Source: Trichosphaerium sp. ATCC 40318 (taxonomy: Eukaryota; Protista; Tubulinea). Taken from it: a stretch of DNA of 64,000 bases. The stretch is from positions 186,001 through 250,000 of the forward strand of contig JALMLS010000228.1 in NCBI GenBank assembly GCA_038496445.1, given 5' to 3'. Under the pieces are notes generated by a model that saw nothing but the letters and a program-made list of their open reading frames with translations, searched no databases and was not told the DNA's origin. Positions 9,706 through 63,291 of the stretch are shown here, in pieces; position 1 is the stretch's first letter; every line of letters starts with the position of its first letter. The position numbers and the translations under genes were made by a program.

Positions 9706-11417
9706 ATGGAGGATGAATCAAAGAAATTAGAAAGTATTCTTGGGCAATCTATAGCAGATGACGAGGAAGAGAGCGCGTTGGATCAGTCTGTGGAGATAAG
9801 GGAAAGCAATGATATTTCGATGGAAAAGAGTTACAGGGACTCTAAATCACCGAAACCTGTGACAAATTCGAAAAGTGAGCCACGTAGAGCACGCTCAGAG
9901 TCACCTAGGCGAACCAGGTCAAGTGAACGAAGATCTGATACAAAGCGTCGTGAGACGAAAATAAGCCCAGAGCGAGGTCACAGAAGCAAGAAGGAGCGCT
10001 ATTTTGTAATGAAGAGCTATAATCTAGAGAATTTAGTCCATTCTATTAACCATGGCATCTGGGCAACCCAACAACACAACGAAAAAAAGCTTTGTGACGC
10101 CTTCAGAGTATGCATACAATAACCATCATTATTGCACTTCATAATATTTCAAAAAACTCAACGCATTTTTAATGGTAGACATCAAAAGAGGTGATTCTGG
10201 TTTTTTCAGTTAACAACAGCCGTCACTTCCAAGGCTATGGGAAAATGATGTCGACAATAACAAGAAAAAGAGACAGGGGATGGGAGGTATCAGAGTCTGG
10301 AAAGGCACCTTGGGGACACACATTTAAGCTCCAATGGCTTCGCTTGTATCTTTTTTTTTTTTTTTTCAACTTTTTTTTTTACAACTTCGGTTCAAAACAA
10401 CCTTAACTCTCCAAAGATATGAGCTACCCTTCCAAGAGACGATGCATTTACATAATCCACTTAATGAGAACAAACCTGTCAAGAGATCCCGTGATGGTCA
10501 GGAACTGACTGCTGAAGTTGCTCTTGCGCTTTGTAAATTAATAGATGAGGGCGCTAAGAGGGACGAAAAGAAGAAAAAGTACGTGTAAAGCAAGTAGTTG
10601 GCCGTTCACTGAAACTGAAAGCTCTGCATAGTTTTTTTTTTTCTTTTTTGCCGCGTGGCGTTCTAACATAACTCACAGGAAATACTCTATTCCTAAGAAG
10701 CCTGTGACGCCACCAAGGGATGATAGTGACAGAAGAAAGCCAGTTAAGCGACCACGACGGGAAGAAGATCAAAGACGTCCTAGACGTGATGAAAGACCTC
10801 GCACACCGCCTAGAAAACGTGAACCAAGACCTCGGTCGCCAGCGAGAAGTAAAAGGTAAGATATTATATCGTTTCATTCCTAAGGCTAACTTTTCTTGTA
10901 GAGCTTCCTATCCTCCTTCTTCTCGGAGTGATAGGCATAAGCAAGATGGTGGACGCAGTTGGCCAGATGCAAGACGCAGAGATTCGAGGGATTCGAGGGA
11001 TTCAAGGGATACAAGGGATTCGAGGGATTCAAGGGATTCAAGGGATTCAAGGGATTCGAGGGATTCGAGAGATGCGAGAGATGCAAGAGATAGAGATATG
11101 AGGCAACAGATGCCGGTAAGAATTTATTGTTATTTATATTCGTCCTTTTCATTTCTTCTTTTTTTAACTTGTATCAGCCATATGAAGCTGATTATCGCTA
11201 TGCTCGCGATCCTTGGTCAATGTCATATGACCCTGCTATGCTGTCAGCTTGGTATGGATATTATACTCCAGATTTCTATGGCGCTGCTCCTCCACCTCCA
11301 AGGGATCGTTACAGACCTCCAGATGGCCGTGATTACAGAGATTATGGCAGGCCTAGTCGTGATTATAATAGAGATGGTCATAGAGATAGACCAAGGGAGA
11401 GAAGACGATACAATTAA
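9706..11417 (+). CDS. YTH-domain m6A-reader protein (YTHDC1-like) with RS/RD low-complexity regions
   Basis: RYFVMKSYNLENLVHSINHGIWATQQHNEKKL, ILVFSVNNSRHFQGYGKM, NPLNENKPVKRSRDGQEL. Confidence 0.92.
10978..11090 (+). repeat. 9-bp coding minisatellite (AGGGATTCR)n encoding RDS/RDA repeats
   Basis: About 12 tandem units visible; translation RDSRDSRDSRDTRDS...RDARDARD. Confidence 0.9.
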
Positions 11418-12092
11418 CGAAGGAAGAAAAGAAAAGAACACGAGATTTTTTTTTGATGTTTTTTTTTTTGAAAAATTTGTTTTGAATGGACACTTCTCTT
11501 CTCCTCTCTTCTTTGCAAAAGTACATTGCGTGGAGTATAATATTGGCTATTATTGCATATTTGTATACAACAACATGAATGTCAAAAATAATGAAGCAGA
11601 GATTTAAAAAAAAGAAACTTGTGATTTGATAATCGAGGCTGACAAAAGGGAGAAAAAAAGATAATATGGGGATAATTTTTTTTTAATTTTTAAAGGTTGC
11701 TTACTCTCTACATGCCTCTCACCTTTTGGTTGGATGTAATTATGATCATATATATACATATATAAACTATTAATCAGGGCAGGGCTGCGTTTCTAGTAAA
11801 TATTGGTCTACAAGAACACTTCCAAAAAAAAAAAAAGACTTCGTAAAAAAAAAAAAGAAAAAAAAAGAGTTGTTGTCGTTTTTTAACCATCTAGGATAGG
11901 TTGAAACCCAAAAAGTCCACCACATATAGATGAAAACTAGAGGTACATAATACTGATATTAGCTTAGGGTTATGTGGGGTTTTTTTATTGATACTTCATT
12001 AAACGTGATTTTTTTTTCATTCTTTTATTTTTTTCTTTGTACAATTTAGGTGTGTCAATAAAGAATCAACACTGCTCATTTTGTTCCTTGTT

Positions 12093-17368: not shown

Positions 17369-18706
17369 TCACCTACGAACATTTGGAACACCTGCCAATA
17401 TCTTCATTACACCTTCATTTGTTATTGAAAAACATCCTACCAACACGATTGTATGTGCACCAACCAACGCCTTCAATCCTTCATCTGTTATTGATTCGCA
17501 TTCTCTCAGCTTGATTGTATGTGCACCAACTAATGCCTTCAAATGTTCATCTGTCACATGTGTGTAGCTTAAATCAATGGTATGAACACCAGCGAGAGCT
17601 TTAATACCTTCATCTGTTATGTTCCTACAATAACTAAGATCAATTGTATGAACTCCATGCAACGCCTTTATACCAATGTCTGTAATACAATTACAATCAT
17701 ACAAGCAGATTGTGTGAACACCAGTCAAAGCCTTTAATCCTAAATCAGTCACATTAGTAGATGCTAAGTCTATTTCATGAACACCAGCCAACGATTTTAA
17801 ACCTTCATCTGTAATTCTTGTAGCAGCTAAACCAATGACATGCACACCAGCTAACATCTTTACCCCTTCATTAGTTACCTTATTACAATAATTTAACCTG
17901 ATTTTATGTACACCGGCCAATAATTTCAAGGCTTTATCAGTAACTTCTGTTGATGATAAATTAATTTCATAAACACCAGCTAATACTGAAATACCTTCAT
18001 CAGTTATTTGTGCACAAAAACCCAAGTTAATTGTATGGACACCAACAAACACCTTAACACCTTCATCAGTTATTAGGCTACAACAACTCAAGTTGATTGT
18101 ATGTACACCGGCCAATGATTTCAAGGCTTTATCAGTAACTTCTGTAGCTGATAAATTAATTTCATGAACGCCAGCCAATACTGAAATACCTTCATCAGTT
18201 ATATTGTAACAATCATTTAACTTGATTGTGTGAGCACCAGCTATCCATTTCAGAGCTTCATCATTCACACCTGTTTGAGATAAATCAATTCTATGCACTC
18301 CAGCTAAGTGCCTTATACCTTTTTCTGTTATTTTCTTGCAACCATTCAAGACGATATCTCGAACACCAGAAAGTAATTTTAAATGACTGTCTGTAACACG
18401 TGCTTTAAAATTGAAAGTAGAATGTTTGTAAAGAGCAATTCTTGTATTTTGAAGTAAAGCGGTCCCAACAAGTAAGTTTAGCGAGGCTTCACTTGAAACA
18501 TTAATACATCCGTATCCCACATGTTTATGGACGATATCATGCATTAAATGGCATGTTTGCGCTGTCTGAAGTGTAAACGTTCCACTCTTCAGAATTTGAA
18601 CAATTATTTCAACGGGTAGTTCTGTGATGCTTACAGCGTCTTCTTTTGAGGTACATTGAGTTGTTATACCAGCATTGTAATCTTTTTCATCATTATTTTG
18701 TTCCAT
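17369..18706 (-). CDS. Intronless F-box / leucine-rich-repeat protein (copy A)
   Basis: Likely start MEQNN, shared with the paralog; F-box-like ITELPVEIIVQIL; about 15 repeats of 21-22 aa (AGVHTIxLxxxxxITDEGxKxL). Confidence 0.9.
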   Translation of the reverse strand: MEQNNDEKDYNAGITTQCTSKEDAVSITELPVEIIVQILKSGTFTLQTAQTCHLMHDIVHKHVGYGCINVSSEASLNLLVGTALLQNTRIALYKHSTFNFKARVTDSHLKLLSGVRDIVLNGCKKITEKGIRHLAGVHRIDLSQTGVNDEALKWIAGAHTIKLNDCYNITDEGISVLAGVHEINLSATEVTDKALKSLAGVHTINLSCCSLITDEGVKVFVGVHTINLGFCAQITDEGISVLAGVYEINLSSTEVTDKALKLLAGVHKIRLNYCNKVTNEGVKMLAGVHVIGLAATRITDEGLKSLAGVHEIDLASTNVTDLGLKALTGVHTICLYDCNCITDIGIKALHGVHTIDLSYCRNITDEGIKALAGVHTIDLSYTHVTDEHLKALVGAHTIKLRECESITDEGLKALVGAHTIVLVGCFSITNEGVMKILAGVPNVRR

Positions 18707-19665
18707 TCTGTAGCACACGACGGCCTGGGCTTTTGGGTTATTCGATGTAATAGAAAAAAGATGTATCCTAAGCAAAATAATTAATCTTCACTGTGGTACT
18801 TAAATGAAGATGTGCCTGAGATAAGAAGGCAGGATGTAACGTTTTAGTTCCGATTAATAGAACTTAATTACAATGCACTCCCAACTAATATTGTCAACTC
18901 ATGTCAAGTTAACACTGTAGGTATTTTTAGTTTTCTCAAAAAGGAATCCCAGCAACAGCTTTGTCCGTTTTCATTTTTTCTTGAAAATAGTAAAGCGCTG
19001 TAGTCTCATTGCACATGTTTTTTTTTCAGTTTTTTTTATTGAGTATGAAACAATTACAAATTTATGTCAAACTCTGGTACAAGAACGCTGTTTAGAGCAG
19101 TTTGCATGACGCCTTTCCACGTGCGTGTGTAAGTTTGAAAATAGAAAATTTGGTAAGGCGTTTTACATTCAAAACTAGCCTGGCACAACAACTCATAAGG
19201 TTGTAGCAAAGGTAATCGAGGTATATCACACTACTAAAGTAGAATGAATTCGTCATCATAGGAAATACATCACGGGCATAGAATAAACAAACGATAGTTG
19301 AGGAAGTACTAAATATGTATGAAAATTTACTGGCACAAACCTGTTTGAAATGATTCTAAAACAACCTCTGCATTTACACTTACCTAATGACTCCTTCACG
19401 AAGTCACTCGGAGATCTCGTTGTGAGCACGTTAGATTTGATCATTCAATTAACGAATATAAAGAGCACATAGTACTAAAAGCGTAGGTATAGCAATGTAC
19501 CTGTACAGTTGTGGGCTAACAGCACCATGTGATATCACGTGATTCACTCCAAACATTCATTGAACCATGTTAAATCTCGAACCTTCTCATCGCGCTGCAG
19601 TATTTAAAACTCCGCACAGGTGCACATTTTTCTATTCTTTATCTTGTATTGTTTACCAACACACT

Positions 19666-23606: not shown

Positions 23607-23857
23607 TGTAATTTTTAGCGCATAGATTTCTTAGCCTGGATCGTCTGTTGTTGTTTGTAGTCCAAATGTCGAGAAGAATACGTCCATTAAATAATTGAGG
23701 TACTTTTTGTGAAAGAGCCTCAACGCAAGGTGCGACAAGAGAGTGTAATGAGAAAATTCATAAAACGAAAAGTTGGGCGCAAGAAAATCGCGCATGTTTT
23801 TCAGAACATTCAACATTGGTCTGTAGATTAGGTAGTTTCGCTACAGATTGTTACAAA

Positions 23858-26634
23858 ATGCAAGTGGAACCGTTTTCCTTCGAACAGAGAACCAATGCGG
23901 TAATGTACGCTAAACGATTATTTCTATTTGGTTTCTCAAATTTCTAACGCTCATTTCTGTATAGTTCTTGTCCGCTATGTGGCGCAAAAGTACGTAAAAC
24001 AAATTTACACTTCAACAGTAGTTAACATTGACACAGACGAACCCAAATGCGTTAAATATGTGCGTACAATGTATACGTACGCAAGTAGACATCACTGAGG
24101 GCATACCAAAACAGTGTACACTTCAATGGTGTAAGGGTTGCGGAAGGTAACTGAAAGCAGCAAAAAAACGCCGTGGGTAACCTTGAATGTAGGTACCTTG
24201 TCCCTCCTGATCGTTGGGCCTTTGCCAACTTAGAATCCCCACAATTGCTTCATGTATGCTTAAAACGGTACGTAATGGCATAGGAAACGTCAAAAGAGGC
24301 ATCAGATACCTTATTAACCGACTTTAAAACAAACCCGCTAATTTTGCCGCAATTCCACTTAAAAACGCGCAATAACTTACTTTGGAGTAGTCTAAGAGGA
24401 CTTAATAAAGTCACAATGAAGGATGCTAGTTTCATTTGGACTGAGCCTCACTCTAAACGTATCAAAGTAAAATTGCGAGTCAGAAAAGAGGTACATTTTT
24501 GTTTCTGTTTCCTTTCGTAGTAGGCCCTTTTATGTCTTTGTTTTCGAATTTTAGTTCCGAAAGTCCATTTACAGTACGTCTTGTGCAACTATTTAATGCT
24601 TAATTAAGGTCTTTGGTGCTGCTGTATTGGAACAAACATTCGTTGTTGAATATGTTGTCGCAAACTTTTTCTGCCCAGATTGTCATCGTGCTGAAGCTAA
24701 AGAACAATGGAAAGCAGTTTGTCAAGTGAGACAAAAGGTGCGTTAACATTTTTTTTTACGCATTTAATACAACCGAAAACTGAAAACATTCGCGTGCGCT
24801 TTGCACAAGAATAAGAAAAAAAAACCAAGAAAAATAATTGAACCAAAAACCAACCGTTCGCTAACTAAGCTACCTACAATAGGTCAGTCATAAACGTACA
24901 TTCTTATGGCTCGAACAAGTAATCTTAAAACACAGAGCTCATGCAAATGCATCGAATATCAAGACAGAGAAGGACGGAGTAGACTTTTACTTTCCACTTC
25001 AACAACATCAACTAAAATTCCTCGACTTTCTCCAAGCAGTTTCACCTATCCGATGGAAACACGCGAAACAGCTCGTATCTCATGATGCAAAGAGTAACAT
25101 AGCTAATTTCAAATTCGCTTGTTCTATCGAAATTGTTCCTATCTGTAGGGCACGTGAAAATCACGTGTGAGAATTTTTTTTCTTCTAACTTTTTTTTTCA
25201 GGAAGATTTGGTTGTATTACCAAAACGTTTGGCTCACTCTTTGGGTCATATCTTCCCATTGAGTCTTTGTTGGAAGGTTTCAAATATTATTCATTTTATT
25301 GATCCTTTTACATTACAAGCAGCTGAGTTGACGTCAGACGCATACTGGGCTACTCCTTTTGCTTCAATTGCAAATAGAGGAGGTTTAACACCTTTTGTTG
25401 TTCTTGATATTGAACCTCTTGGTGTTGTTAATGGAAAGGTAAAGTAGATATTTCGTTTATGAAAAACAACGCTAAATCTCACGCTTCAGTTTCTTTGTCT
25501 AATACCTTTTTTTAGTTCATTTTGGCTGAGGCTACTGTTGCTCGTAGTAAGGATCTTGGTGTTAATGATACTGTGTTTATAACAAGAACACATTTGGGAA
25601 GGTCATTAAAGGCAGGAGATAATTGTTTAGCGTATGTTTGAAGCAAACAAATCAAATTAACTGTTCTCACTTTGTCCTATAGATATGATTTAACTACACT
25701 TAATCTTGGCATAGACACACTCATGCCTAACACAGAGGTTCCTGAAATTGTACGTCCATACTTGCCATAAAATTTGAGACGTTCTCAGTTTTTTTTGTTT
25801 CTTTCTTTGCTTCCTGATTGTTTACTGGTTCCCTCATAGATTTTGGTCAAGAAATACTATCCTATTCGCCGACGTAAAATCAAACGCCGTCATTGGGACA
25901 TCAAAACACTCGTTAAGGATGAAGCAGAGAATATGACAAAAGCTGACATGAACAAAGAAGAGTACGTTTTGGATTTTATTGCAAAAGGAGGATTTTCGAC
26001 CAAACCACTTTCAAAAATCTCTCCTTCTCTAATGGATACGGCCATACAACCATGAAAACTCCGTGTCTCTTTCCGAACCGCGAAGATAAGCATGGTATGG
26101 CCCTGCCAGTACTTGGGTCCGTGAGGACCAGGGAACGTAGGGTGCTGTATTCATTTTGCTTTTTTTTTGTTTTGCCTTTCCACTTGCTGTGTTTGTCTTA
26201 TTTATAATTTGAATAGAGCGGACAGAGAACGCCTAATGCGAGATATTGAGGAAGATCCAGATTTCAGAGAACAATTTGATTTAATTAAAGGTACGTGGCA
26301 TGACGCCTTTGTTTTATCAATTCCTGTTTTTTTCTTCGTTTTCTCCTTATTAGACTTTGCGTTACTGACCCATTTATTAGTTGCTGGTGCTGAAGAAATA
26401 TTTAAAAATAATCAAAAAATCATCAATGATCCAAACTCTATGCTAGACGAAGAAGTAGAGACAGACTTCCCAGAAATTCGTATGTGTTTTTTTTTGCAAT
26501 TTTTGAATGACTTGTTGGTCCCTTATGTTCTTTTAGAAATGGACGAACTCGCTGATGATTTGCAAAAAATGACAATCAATAAACCTGTATTGGATCACTT
26601 ATCTGATAACGAGGATATGGATATGGATGAATAA
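23858..26634 (+). CDS. NMD3: 60S ribosomal export adaptor NMD3 (many short exons)
   Basis: DASFIWTEPHSKRIKVKL, CPDCHR, QVRQKVSHKRTFLWLEQVILKH, DGVDFYF, RTHLG, YDL, DIEEDPDFR. Confidence 0.95.
26034..26152 (+). rRNA. 5S rRNA: 5S rRNA gene nested in NMD3 intron 25962-26216
   Basis: 119 nt GGATACGGCCATAC...CCGAAC..GAAGATAAGC...AGTACTTGGG...GGGAAC...GTGCTGTATTC; 5' and 3' ends pair (GGATACGGC/GCTGTATTC); T-runs follow. Confidence 0.95.
26154..26168 (+). terminator. Pol III oligo-dT terminator of 5S gene
   Basis: TTTTGCTTTTTTTTT immediately after the 5S 3' end. Confidence 0.8.
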
Positions 26635-27027
26635 AGCTCTATTCATTCAGGCAAAATATTGCCTCCTGAATTTTTTTGCTTTACTGAGGGACTCGTTTTA
26701 ACAGTAAGCCTTTTGGGAGGAAATAAGCAAGAATTTGAATTCGAGATGCCCATCGTAGTATCAAATTGAAAGGGACAAATGTAGCGGATTCAGCATGTCA
26801 AGGTTTGTACTAATTGACATCAATTCATTTATAAATAAAAATAAGAAAAAAATACAAGTGTCTATGTTTTCCACAGTGATGCAAATGGTATTAATTAATG
26901 CTTTTCGAAGTTGTACCAACCATATTTCTCTATGTTATAGAGGGTATAGTTTCATATGCGAACTCTTCCTTCTCTTATGCTGGTAGTTCAATTGTAGTAC
27001 TGCTGTTACGTTTGCACCACTTGATGT

Positions 27028-34716: not shown

Positions 34717-36105
34717 ATGGAACAAAATAATGATGAAAAAGATTACAATGCTGGTATAACAACTCAATGTAACTCAAAAGAAGACGCTGTAAGCATCACA
34801 GAACTACCCGTTGAAATAATTGTTCAAATTCTGAAGAGTGGAACGTTTACACTTCAGACAGCACAAACATGCCATTTAATGCATGATATCGTCCACAACC
34901 ACGTGGGATACGGCTGTATTAATGTTTCAAGTGAAGCCTCGCTAAACTTACTTGTTGGGACCGCTTTACTTCAAAATACAAGAATTTCTCTTTCGAAAAT
35001 TAAAGCACGTATTACAGACAGTCATTTAAAATTACTTTCTGGTGTTAAAGATATCGTCTTGAGTGGTTGCAAGAAAATAACGGAAAAAGGTATAAGGCAC
35101 TTAGCTGGAGTGCATAGAATTGATTTATCTCGAACAAGTGTGAATGATGAAGCTTTGAAATGGATAGCTGATGTTCATACAATCAACTTGGATTTATGTA
35201 AAAGTATTACTGACGAGGGTATCAACGCATTGACAGCTGTACACAGTATATCATTGGCATTCACAAATATCAAAGATACATGTATTGCAGGATTAGCAGG
35301 CGCGCACACAATCAACCTTGCTGGTTTCCAGTGTAAAAGTGGAGAAATTACAAAGTTATCAGGTGTTCATAAAATTGATTTGTCGTACACCAGAGTAACA
35401 GACGAGCACTTGAAGGCGTTCGTTGGTGTACACGAAATCAAGCTAGATGGTTGTATCAATATAACTAATGACAGTATACGATTATTTGCTGGTGTCCACA
35501 CTATTCACTTAGGCTATACTGATGTATCTGATGAGTCTGTTAGTGTATTGGCTGGTGTTCATGAAATTGATTTATCTTCTACAAACGTTACTGATAAAGC
35601 CTTGAAATCATTGGCCGGTGTACATACAATCAAGTTGGGGAGTTGTAGGCATGTAACTGATGAAGGGATAAAGATGTTAGCCGGTGTACATACAATCAAG
35701 TTGGGGAGTTGTAAGAATGTAACTGATGAAGGGATAAAGATGTTAGCTGGTGTGCATATAATTGGCTTATCATCTACAGAAATCACAGATGAGGGTTTGA
35801 AAGCATTGGCCGGTGTTCATACAATTGATCTGTCATATACTAAAATTACGGATGAAGGTTTGAAAGCATTGGCTGGTGTTCACAGAATTACGTTGAAGGG
35901 TTGCGATTGTATTACAGACATTGGTGTAAAGGCACTAGCTGGAGTTCATACAATTGATTTAACTGGCATACAGAGTGTGACTGATGAATGCTTGAAGGCT
36001 TTGGTTGGTGCACATACAATCGTGTTGGTATCTTGTTTGTTTATAACAAACGAAGGTGTAAAGGTATTGGCAGGTGTTCCAAATGTTGTTCTAGATAGGT
36101 ATTAA
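34717..36105 (+). CDS. Intronless F-box / leucine-rich-repeat protein (copy B)
   Basis: First ~90 aa almost identical to copy A; same 21-22 aa repeat; near-perfect 66-bp tandem duplication at about 35614-35745. Confidence 0.9.
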   Translation: MEQNNDEKDYNAGITTQCNSKEDAVSITELPVEIIVQILKSGTFTLQTAQTCHLMHDIVHNHVGYGCINVSSEASLNLLVGTALLQNTRISLSKIKARITDSHLKLLSGVKDIVLSGCKKITEKGIRHLAGVHRIDLSRTSVNDEALKWIADVHTINLDLCKSITDEGINALTAVHSISLAFTNIKDTCIAGLAGAHTINLAGFQCKSGEITKLSGVHKIDLSYTRVTDEHLKAFVGVHEIKLDGCINITNDSIRLFAGVHTIHLGYTDVSDESVSVLAGVHEIDLSSTNVTDKALKSLAGVHTIKLGSCRHVTDEGIKMLAGVHTIKLGSCKNVTDEGIKMLAGVHIIGLSSTEITDEGLKALAGVHTIDLSYTKITDEGLKALAGVHRITLKGCDCITDIGVKALAGVHTIDLTGIQSVTDECLKALVGAHTIVLVSCLFITNEGVKVLAGVPNVVLDRY

Positions 36106-61217: not shown

Positions 61218-63291
61218 TTATGACTCTGCCTCAACTTTAGGTACAGCAGCTTCAGTGTCTTCCTTATCCTGTTGTTCTACTTCTTGTCGTATATCTTTCA
61301 ATAAAGCCTTGAGGTTCGCTCTAGTCTCTTTACCCATTCCAACCCTCATCAATCTTCCTTTCATTTGATTTGTAAGCCTTGGGAAAAAAAATAAGTTTTA
61401 AGTGAGAACAAACAAGTGACATTCAAACAACGTGCATTTTGGGATTGAATAATCTCATTATGCAAAGAGGGTGAGAAAAATACTTACTTGTTATCAAGCA
61501 TTCTATACATGTGAAGGCCCACGTTTTTCTTATGTGCATTTGTTTCATCAGCAAGGTCCAAGTATTCATCTATTAGTTGCCATGTATCTATCTTCTTTCC
61601 AGAGAAAAAAGCTGGGTTATGTAATAATGCATCTTTTGAAAGGTCAGTATCACACAAAACAAAAATAACAACAGCGCAAAGTGCTGTGGGGTAAAGAATA
61701 AGGTGCATCTTTGTTTCAAAGAAATTTAACAATACGATGGAATACTCACCTGCACTCATGATACCATCTACACCTGTTTCAGCTATACAACGCTCAATAT
61801 CACCAAATTCTTGTATGCCGCCATTTGCAATAACAGGAATTGTAAGTGCTTCCCTGATACAAACATTAAAAAACTGACATTCCAAAAAAAAAATGTTACT
61901 TTATGCGCTTTATTATTTTCCAATTAGCTGCACCAGTGTTCGCCCTAGATACAAGAAGTTACGAAAAGAATTTTCAGAGGGAGTAAGCAAATAGAGTACC
62001 TGACATTTTCTTTAGTACGGCCATGTACAGCCAAAAGCTACATGATTAAAGTCAGTGCAAATAGTACAATGTAAGAAATTTTTTTTTATACCTGAGCACC
62101 AGCCTCTTCAATGCCCTTTGCAAGTGCTATTGTATCATCATCATTTTTTAGAATACGTATTTTAGCAAAAACTGGTATTTTTAATCCATCTGCAAGTGTT
62201 TTAACTACAGTAACAATAAGCGAACCGAGTTTTAACAAAGAAGTAATTGCGAAAGTTCTCCATTGATTTTTAGCAAAATCACAAAACGAAGAGGCCATAG
62301 ACCAACTCGCTTGTATTCCAGAAATTGGGATATAGCTAATTAGCATACACCCACGAGACTTGGATTGTAGTTTTCAAATAGCAACGAGTGTTGATCCGGG
62401 TGGACGTCACTTCATTCACTTACTACCCCAAGCGCAAAGACATGAGTATTGTATTGAATTGTAGTATTTAAACAAGTGCATATTAACAAATAAAAAATTA
62501 TGGTACATAGAACATAGCAAAGCGAAAGACAATCAAGCAAATTCATTGAAACTGAACTGTTATTTTTTTCATAAATTTCGCAGATTTACTTGACTTGTAA
62601 AAAACACGTGCCTATATGAAAAACCTTTTCGGGTGTCTCTAGTAAGAAAGCACCATATCCACCTTTTCTTGCACATCGTTGTGGACAACCAAGGTTTATA
62701 TCTATAGCGTCACATTGATCTTCAATTATTCTCGCTGCATCCAGTAGTATTGACGCGTCTGTTCCATTAAATTGAGCTACGAGTGGTCTGTTTATCGAAA
62801 AATAGTGTAAGCCATGGAGCTAATTGCGTGTTAATAATTTTTGGGACCTGTCATCCGGAGAAGGGTCAAAATGCTTTTGTCTATATGTAGGATCCTTTCT
62901 GAAGTTAAAACTATGCGTTGGATAAGTTTCGGTGGAGAAATTGATGCAAAGTCTTTTTGAATGCGTACGCATGCATCATTGGCGTATATGTGAGCTCTGC
63001 ACCATATCTAAAAGCGTATTATATTTATTTACAGAAAGAATTGTGTTTTTCTTGTATAATTCTTCGAGCGTATAGTATGCGCGTCGTACCTCCTTGTAAG
63101 CAAACGGAATGCCAATTCGGACCCATCTACCTATAAAAAGCTGTAAAATCGCTAATATACGTCTGATTATTACCATAGGTGCCACCATTAGGCGAGGAGC
63201 TCCTAATTTTTCAAATGTAGCGTAAGCTGTTGTTTCTACAAGTACATTAGCGAAATGTACCAACAGGCACTCTTGTACTTTTTTGCTCCAT
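61218..63291 (-). CDS. DUS1: tRNA-dihydrouridine synthase 1-like
   Basis: VAPMVDGSELAFR, DRPLVAQF, IDINLGCPQ, YGAFL, PVFAKIR, AVHGRT, IPVIANGGI. Confidence 0.93.
62287..62441 (-). ncRNA. U4: U4 spliceosomal snRNA nested in DUS1 intron 62205-62611
   Basis: 5' GUCUUUGCGCUUGGGG (U6 stem II arm), UUGCUAUUUGAAAACU (stem I arm), Sm site AAUUUCUGG, flanking stem-loops, ~155 nt. Confidence 0.9.
62498..62505 (-). promoter_or_regulatory. DUSE/PSE-like snRNA upstream element
   Basis: TACCATAA about 57-64 nt upstream of U4, one mismatch from the Dictyostelium DUSE consensus WCCCAYAA and at the expected distance. Confidence 0.5.

What the first reader, a model, noticed from the sequence alone, without database searches (positions are those of the whole stretch)
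25962..26216. 5S rRNA gene nested, sense, in an intron of the 60S export factor NMD3
Seen: a complete 119-nt 5S gene with terminal helix and oligo-T terminator, inside an unusually long GT-AG intron. Known: 5S genes are usually tandem, rDNA-linked or dispersed Pol III units with internal promoters; 5S is a 60S component and NMD3 exports 60S. Inference: a dispersed intronic 5S organisation, possibly with Pol II/Pol III coupling or interference at a functionally related host gene.
Basis: partly seen in the sequence, partly recalled or inferred. Interest (0 to 1): 0.8.

Follow-up and report, generated by a model that had tools for sequence, protein, structure and literature searches.

The report
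5S rRNA gene inside NMD3 intron
A complete, normal 5S ribosomal RNA gene with its own start and stop signals sits, pointing the same way as its host, inside a genuinely spliced intron of the ribosome-export gene NMD3 in an amoeba-like protist; it looks like one case of a genome-wide habit of tucking small RNA genes into introns, not a special tie to NMD3.

Summary
Rfam 5S_rRNA matches window 26034-26153 (+) end to end (93.7 bits, E 5.6e-19). The gene folds as the canonical three-way junction and is followed by TTTTGC plus T9. It lies in intron 11 (25962-26216, 255 nt, GT-AG) of a 14-exon, 521-codon NMD3 gene. cDNA-like contigs from three studies show that intron, and the other 12, cleanly removed.

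RNA-run contigs carry the same 5S joined to other flanks. The copies agree only from about -41 to the end of the T-run, a unit of about 175 nt with a shared upstream core ACCnnACCACTnnCAAAA. Without this unit the intron would be about 80 nt, ordinary for this gene (46-145 nt).

The best reading is an autonomous Pol III 5S unit nested in an ordinary intron. Transcription of this particular copy was not shown.

The NMD3 link is probably coincidental. The only other small-RNA gene in the window, U4, also lies sense in an intron, of a Dus gene. Unchecked scan notes on other pieces of this genome report the same sense-in-intron layout for 5S in at least seven unrelated hosts, so the scan has found this before.

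Intronic Pol III genes are well known for tRNAs in worms and flies. I found no paper on an intronic, consistently sense 5S organisation. Verdict: a new variant of a known kind.

The parts
26034..26153 (+). 5S rRNA gene, full length (120 nt)
   Evidence: Rfam RF00001, 93.7 bits, model 1-120. Canonical fold, z -3.6. The X3 RNA-run contig is identical over 26052-26163.
25993..26033 (+). Upstream block conserved between 5S copies (-41 to -1), with core ACCAAACCACTTTCAAAA at 25999-26016 (-35 to -18); candidate upstream promoter element
   Evidence: An X1 contig from another locus aligns from 25993, with changes only at 26027, 26028 and 26030, and is unalike before that. The upstream letters of an X4 copy match ours at 18 of 30 positions in register and share ACCnnACCACTnnCAAAA (aligned by hand). 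The motif occurs once in the window at 0 mismatches. A promoter role is inferred.
26154..26168 (+). Pol III terminator-like T-runs (TTTTGC + T9)
   Evidence: Read from the sequence. Other copies diverge only after 26164, 26166 or 26168, so the T-run belongs to the conserved unit. The X3 contig runs to 26163.
25962..26216 (+). NMD3 intron 11, 255 nt, GT-AG, phase 2; hosts the 5S unit (72 nt from 5' splice site to 5S, 63 nt from 5S end to 3' splice site)
   Evidence: Joint 25961>26217 in X1, X3 and X4. Lengths and phases.
23858..26634 (+). NMD3 gene: 14 exons, 521 codons, 13 introns
   Evidence: Pfam NMD3, NMD_SH3 and NMD3_OB on exon pieces. All 13 joints seen in cDNA-like contigs. Phase check without joining exons.
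62302..62441 (-). U4 snRNA gene, sense inside a 407-nt GC-AG intron (62205-62611) of a Dus-family gene; second nested small-RNA gene of the window
   Evidence: Rfam RF00015, 62.3 bits. Dus Pfam profile 59-112, 116-153 (weak) and 179-214 on collinear minus-strand exon pieces either side. Splicing of this intron was not checked with reads here.

Best explanation
This is one copy of a dispersed 5S rRNA gene family in an amoebozoan-like protist. The copy is a self-contained RNA polymerase III unit of about 175 nt. It has a short conserved upstream element (about -41 to -1, core at -35 to -18), the 120-nt gene with its internal control region, and a T-run terminator. The unit sits in the middle of what would otherwise be an ordinary 80-nt intron of NMD3, on the host's strand. 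Pol II reads through it and the spliceosome removes it with the intron. Pol III is inferred to transcribe it on its own. The NMD3 host is most likely incidental. In this genome introns seem to be the usual home of small-RNA genes, and the sense orientation probably reflects a genome-wide constraint, for example avoiding head-on Pol II/Pol III encounters or antisense-5S pre-mRNA. Shown: gene identity, intron identity and splicing, several loci with a shared unit, and identity to 5S sequence in RNA runs. Inferred: Pol III transcription of this copy, the promoter role of the upstream block, and the reason for the sense bias.
For: The 5S match is full length and high scoring with a canonical fold. 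T4 and T9 follow the 3' end directly. Contigs from other loci share sequence only from 25993 to about 26164-26168 and then diverge, so the upstream 41 nt and the T-run are kept along with the gene. A more diverged copy still keeps ACCnnACCACTnnCAAAA in register. The intron is cleanly spliced in three studies. It is 255 nt against 46-145 nt for the other 12 introns, and about 80 nt without the unit. No flanking direct repeat marks the unit's ends. U4 is likewise sense-intronic in a Dus gene. Unchecked scan notes report sense-intronic 5S in a CTD phosphatase, UPF2, an AAA ATPase, SIN1, ABCE1, CAF-1 p60 and a kinase, plus tRNA-iMet genes. No note mentions an intergenic or antisense 5S.
Against: Nothing shows that this particular copy is transcribed. 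The 5S letters are identical between copies, and contigs cannot show starts, strand or level. The upstream-element claim rests on two other copies seen only as contig ends. One comparison is 18 of 30 positions aligned by hand, on the assumption that the printed loose letters abut the match. The genome-wide pattern comes from unchecked notes with likely ascertainment bias, since nested genes get reported and plain ones may not. A consistent sense orientation is also what processing from the host transcript would predict.
Confidence: 0.7

Rival explanations
1. Host-dependent production. The 5S RNA is made from the NMD3 pre-mRNA or its excised intron by trimming, as intronic snoRNAs are. Sense orientation inside an intron would then be obligatory.
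For: Every case noted in this genome is sense and intronic, and U4 in this window is too. The 5S sits centrally in the intron, 72 and 63 nt from the splice sites. In C. elegans, where intronic tRNA genes are autonomous, only 56% are sense (PMC4999229), so a 100% bias would be unusual for autonomous genes.
Against: A T4 + T9 terminator and a 41-nt upstream block are conserved between copies while the rest of the intron is not. Processing would need neither. From general knowledge, the cell's demand for 5S far exceeds what introns of modestly expressed genes could supply. U4 is reported with its own upstream element (note s1-390639, unchecked).
Confidence: 0.1
2. NMD3-specific coupling. The nested 5S tunes NMD3, or the reverse. 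Pol III complexes might impede Pol II, or the perfect 5S fold in the pre-mRNA might bind free uL18(L5) or TFIIIA and alter splicing, linking 60S export capacity to 5S supply.
For: NMD3 and 5S both belong to the 60S pathway (established knowledge). The sense orientation places a true 5S fold in the pre-mRNA. Two other hosts in the notes, ABCE1 and UPF2, are translation-linked. [quoted passage not shown] From my own knowledge, not checked here, plant TFIIIA pre-mRNA uses a 5S mimic bound by L5.
Against: Most of the noted hosts have no ribosome link. The same nesting applies to U4 in a Dus gene. The unit looks like an addition to an ordinary intron. All laid contigs show the intron cleanly removed, with no alternative joint. 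Conservation of the pairing in related species could not be tested.
Confidence: 0.07
3. A silent or decaying copy: a 5S pseudogene or the relic of a 5S-derived mobile element that happened to land in an intron.
For: No locus-specific transcript evidence exists. Dispersed 5S families in fungi and animals commonly include pseudogenes (general knowledge).
Against: The copy is full length with a very high score and an intact fold. It has 0 differences from the X3 RNA-run contig over 26052-26163. The upstream block and terminator are retained. There is no truncation, A-tail or target-site duplication.
Confidence: 0.1

Closest known systems
Intronic tRNA genes of Caenorhabditis elegans and Drosophila (nested Pol III genes)
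   Same: An autonomous-looking Pol III gene lies inside a spliceosomal intron of a Pol II gene. In C. elegans 44-47% of tRNA genes are intronic and the host promoter licenses or restricts the nested gene (PMC4999229). In Drosophila 46% are intronic (PMC9249942).
   Different: Here the nested gene is 5S rRNA, not a tRNA. In C. elegans the intronic share equals chance and only 56% are sense. In this genome every noted case is sense, though those notes are unchecked. Introns here are tiny (46-145 nt), so the unit triples the intron's length.
Dispersed 5S rRNA genes of fungi and protists (for example Neurospora, Schizosaccharomyces, Acanthamoeba; reviewed by Drouin & Tsang 2012, cited in PMC10161547 and PMC6562748)
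   Same: Single 5S units are scattered through the genome and are not in tandem arrays or linked to the rDNA. Each has an internal control region and a T-run. The 5' end GGAUACGGCCAUAC resembles the Acanthamoeba 5S as I recall it (from memory, not tested).
   Different: The known arrangements listed in those reviews are tandem, rDNA-linked, linked to SL or snRNA genes, or dispersed. I found no mention of intron nesting as an arrangement.
Intron-encoded snoRNAs
   Same: A small structured RNA gene lies in sense orientation inside an intron of a housekeeping gene, often one linked to translation.
   Different: snoRNAs lack their own promoter and terminator and are trimmed from the excised intron. 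This unit keeps an upstream block and a Pol III-type T-run.
Plant TFIIIA P5SM, a 5S rRNA mimic in a pre-mRNA (own knowledge; not retrieved here)
   Same: A 5S-shaped RNA element inside a pre-mRNA of the 5S/60S pathway.
   Different: P5SM is a mimic within an alternative exon, not a real 5S gene, and its regulatory role is demonstrated. Nothing of the kind is shown here.

Membership tests
5S rRNA (Rfam RF00001) | Covariance-model score above the curated gathering score over the whole model | tested here: met
   93.7 bits against 38, model positions 1-120 of 120, E 5.6e-19.
5S rRNA (Rfam RF00001) | Three-way junction with a terminal helix I pairing the 5' and 3' ends | tested here: met
   The MFE structure shows a 9-bp helix I and two arms, z -3.6. 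Only two non-standard pairs are flagged in the cmscan alignment.
5S rRNA (Rfam RF00001) | Same sequence as the 5S RNA present in the cell's RNA | tested here: inconclusive
   The X3 contig is identical over 26052-26163 and an X1 contig covers the whole gene. However, the 'RNA' label of X3 is a guess, contigs cannot prove ribosomal origin, and the first 18 nt are covered only by X1.
Autonomous Pol III type-1 gene | Run of four or more T directly after the gene | tested here: met
   TTTT at 26154-26157 and T9 at 26160-26168, retained in other copies.
Autonomous Pol III type-1 gene | Transcription by Pol III from +1 of this locus, independent of the host | not testable with these tools
   Only contigs were available. 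They show no starts, strand or level.
Nested (intronic) gene | Lies wholly inside an intron that is really spliced from the host mRNA | tested here: met
   Joint 25961>26217, GT..AG, in X1, X3 and X4. The exon either side is in frame.
Intron-processed small RNA (snoRNA-like) | No promoter or terminator of its own; only the mature RNA is conserved between copies | tested here: not met
   The 41-nt upstream block and the T-run are conserved between copies while the remaining intron sequence is not.
5S pseudogene / 5S-derived SINE | Truncation or divergence, an A-rich or foreign tail, flanking target-site duplication | tested here: not met
   Full length. T-run but no A-tail. No flanking direct repeat at the unit's ends.
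NMD3 (60S export adaptor) | N-terminal Cys-rich NMD3 domain followed by SH3-like and OB-fold domains, in that order | tested here: met
   PF04981 on two exon pieces (profile 14-43 and 120-154), PF21193 at 3.5e-19 and PF21192 at 5.7e-12, collinear. The model is 521 codons.
Conserved host/nested-gene pairing (as for Caenorhabditis intronic tRNAs) | The same small-RNA gene in the same intron of the orthologous host in related species | not tested
   No relatives could be fetched. The word search with exon 8 was blank, as were exact look-ups and two metagenome scans. The large protein search was not spent on this.

The most novel reading that the evidence does not exclude
In this amoebozoan lineage the 5S genes, and perhaps small-RNA genes in general, may be obligately housed in sense orientation within spliceosomal introns. 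Their expression would then depend on host Pol II transcription, either through chromatin licensing or through actual release from the intron. Ribosome-pathway hosts such as NMD3 and ABCE1 might also sense the embedded 5S fold in their pre-mRNAs. That would be a previously undescribed mode of 5S gene organisation and Pol II/Pol III coupling.
Probability: 0.15. Interest if true: 0.85.

Novelty: new variant of a known kind. Interest (0 to 1): 0.55.

Why it matters
5S genes are textbook examples of tandem, rDNA-linked or freely dispersed Pol III units. A genome where they live one by one inside short spliced introns, always on the host's strand, would add an arrangement missing from the reviews I could reach. 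It would also offer a compact natural system for asking how Pol II elongation, splicing and a very active Pol III gene share the same 255 bp. For NMD3 itself the practical message is caution: the appealing 60S link is most likely a coincidence of where one copy landed.

Tried and rejected
1. Organism identification and relatives. Exact look-ups of three window ORFs found nothing on record. The word search with NMD3 exon 8 (79 aa) gave no hits, but its length filter excludes full-length NMD3 proteins, so this blank says little.
2. Two metagenome scans, one with a 23-nt exact 5S pattern and one with a degenerate two-anchor 5S pattern, both returned 0. No further 5S loci could be read in full.
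3. The spliced NMD3 model was searched exon by exon, by reference only.
4. The large representative-protein search was not used. The operators flagged it as costly and the protein's identity was not open. It would also return only relatives below 50% identity, which makes for a weak test of pairing.
5. Target-site duplications or terminal repeats around the unit: none convincing.
6. A second copy of the upstream motif in the window: only a chance-level match with 2 mismatches.
7. Other 5S or tRNA genes in the window: none.
8. Literature: ten searches found no report of intronic 5S genes. The library lacks most subscription papers, so this is absence in what was searched, not proof of novelty.
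9. Pseudogene reading: rejected on score, fold and identity to RNA-run contigs.

Full report
**The observation**

The match covers all 120 model positions at 93.7 bits (gathering score 38, E 5.6e-19). A permissive whole-window scan adds only one other RNA gene, a U4 snRNA at 62302-62441 (-). ARAGORN finds no tRNA.

The 120-nt RNA folds into the expected three-way junction closed by a 9-bp helix I. The energy is -45.7 kcal/mol, z is -3.6, and none of 200 shuffles folds as well. Directly after the gene the DNA reads TTTTGCTTTTTTTTTG (26154-26169). That is the kind of T-run at which RNA polymerase III terminates (established knowledge).

**The host gene**

The host is NMD3. Exon pieces given by reference match Pfam NMD3 (two pieces, profile 14-43 and 120-154), NMD_SH3 (3.5e-19) and NMD3_OB (5.7e-12), in the right order.

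I laid contigs of four public runs on 23700-26800. This gave 13 joints, all GT..AG except one. Each is present in one to four of the runs. X1 carries SMART cDNA adaptor letters at its loose ends, so it is cDNA. X3 and X4 are labelled RNA only by a guess, but they contain the spliced forms.

The joint 25961>26217 (skips 255, GT..AG) appears in X1, X3 and X4, which come from three studies. A script placed the splice sites and checked phases without joining the exons:
- 14 exons spanning 23858-26634.
- 1566 nt, or 521 codons.
- Every exon open in its phase.

The intron lengths are 46, 47, 51, 52, 57, 60, 77, 90, 90, 118, 123, 145 and 255 nt. The 5S intron is by far the longest. The 5S lies near its middle, 72 nt from the 5' splice site and 63 nt from the 3' splice site.

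**What the unit is**

The read-laying output also shows that this is one of several 5S loci:
- An X1 contig from another locus matches 25993-26161 with six differences (three of them at 26027, 26028 and 26030). It then continues for 105 letters that are unlike the window.
- Three further X1 contigs leave the window sequence after 26164, 26166 and 26168, and an X4 contig leaves it before 26028.
- An X3 contig is identical from 26052 to 26163.

The copies therefore share the gene, about 41 nt upstream and the T-run, and nothing else of the intron.

The 30 upstream letters printed for the X4 copy match ours (25998-26027) at 18 of 30 positions in register. They share ACCnnACCACTnnCAAAA at -35 to -18. 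I aligned these by hand and assumed the printed letters abut the match. The motif occurs only here in the window at zero mismatches. No direct repeat flanks the block.

Removing the block of about 175 nt would leave an intron of about 80 nt, typical for this gene.

I read this as a self-contained Pol III unit lodged in an ordinary intron. It consists of an upstream element, a gene with its internal control region, and a terminator. The promoter role of the upstream block is an inference, as is Pol III transcription of this particular copy. Contigs cannot show starts, strand or level, and the 5S letters do not distinguish loci.

**Is NMD3 special?**

The evidence says probably not.

In this same window the only other small-RNA gene, U4, also lies in sense orientation inside an intron. 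That intron spans 62205-62611 and has GC-AG ends. It sits between minus-strand exon pieces that match Pfam Dus collinearly at profile positions 59-112 (5e-14), 116-153 (weak, 0.16) and 179-214 (1e-8). I did not check splicing of that intron with reads.

Earlier notes of this scan, on other pieces of the same genome, report intact 5S genes nested in sense orientation in introns of several hosts. These are a Pol II CTD phosphatase, UPF2, an AAA ATPase, SIN1, ABCE1, CAF-1 p60 and a kinase. Two tRNA-iMet genes are reported in the same layout. Fourteen of the fifteen notes that mention 5S also mention an intron, and none mentions an intergenic or antisense copy.

These notes are unchecked and biased towards what looks odd, so I treat them as leads. 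They did change my reading, from 'one dispersed copy, intronic by chance' to 'one case of a genome-wide habit'. So the scan has found this layout before on other DNA of this genome. The notes also describe the organism as amoeba-like, with proteins shared across Amoebozoa. I could not name it.

**Mechanism and rivals**

My favoured account (0.7) is an autonomous Pol III gene that Pol II reads through and the spliceosome discards. Its sense orientation would be imposed by a general constraint, such as avoiding head-on polymerase encounters or avoiding pre-mRNAs that carry antisense 5S. The reason for the bias is speculation.

Processing of 5S from the host intron, as for snoRNAs, would explain the orientation directly. 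It does not explain why the terminator and the upstream block are conserved while the rest of the intron is not (0.1).

A regulatory tie specific to NMD3 cannot be excluded, but nothing here argues for it (0.07). It could work through Pol III interference, or through the 5S fold in the pre-mRNA being bound by uL18 or TFIIIA.

A dead copy is unlikely given the score, the fold and the identity to RNA-run contigs (0.1).

**Comparison with what is known**

Pol III genes nested in introns are familiar:
- In C. elegans 44-47% of tRNA genes are intronic, a share no different from chance. Only 56% of them are on the host's strand. The host promoter nevertheless licenses or restricts the nested tRNA gene, and host/tRNA pairings are conserved between Caenorhabditis species (PMC4999229).
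- In Drosophila 46% of tRNA genes are intronic (PMC9249942).

Reviews of 5S organisation list tandem arrays, linkage to rDNA, SL RNA or snRNA genes, and dispersed copies (PMC6562748 and PMC10161547, both citing Drouin & Tsang 2012).

Ten full-text searches found no report of 5S genes housed in spliceosomal introns, and the phrase 'intronic 5S' occurs in no paper of the library. The library omits most subscription journals, so this is not proof of novelty.

I therefore class the finding as a new variant of a known kind: nested Pol III genes are known, but here the gene is 5S and the orientation is apparently uniform.

**What could not be done**

- No relatives' NMD3 loci could be obtained, so conservation of the pairing is untested.
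- The large protein search was not used, because the operators flagged its cost and the protein's identity was not in question.
- A genome-wide census of 5S copies was not possible from one window.

**Verdict**

The 'dispersed intronic 5S' reading is supported, and the 'functionally related host' reading is not. Interest is moderate (0.55). It would rise sharply if a census confirms that 5S genes are obligately sense-intronic, or if host dependence is shown.

Noticed in passing
window 25150-25201 (+) and 62205-62611 (-): Two GC-AG introns in one window, both starting /GCACGTG: NMD3 intron 7 (joint seen only in X1) and the Dus intron that holds U4. The usual 5' site here is GTACGT, so these are T-to-C variants at position +2. 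GC-AG introns may be fairly common in this genome.
   Followed up: partly
window 62302-62441 (-): A U4 snRNA gene lies sense inside a 407-nt intron of a Dus-family gene. It has TTTAAATA at -31 to -24 and short T-runs downstream. This is a second nested small-RNA gene, already noted by the scan (s1-390639).
   Followed up: partly
window 17369-18775 (-) and 34717-36105 (+): Two long ORFs encode LRR_6-rich proteins whose first ~100 residues and C-termini are nearly identical and whose repeat cores differ. They are inverted paralogues about 16 kb apart.
   Followed up: no
window 24191-24360: A contig of run X5 continues from exon 4 into intron 4 unspliced and carries four or five C/T and G/A differences. 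This suggests a retained intron or DNA from a slightly different strain.
   Followed up: no
window 10720-11607 (+): An ORF with a run of SRD/TRD/ARD tripeptide repeats (RDSRDSRDTRDSRD...), possibly an exon of an RS-like protein.
   Followed up: no
window 26537-26634 (+): The last NMD3 exon encodes MDELADDLQKMTI..., a leucine-rich stretch where NMD3 proteins carry their Crm1 export signal (own knowledge). It ends in an acidic DNEDMDMDE tail.
   Followed up: no
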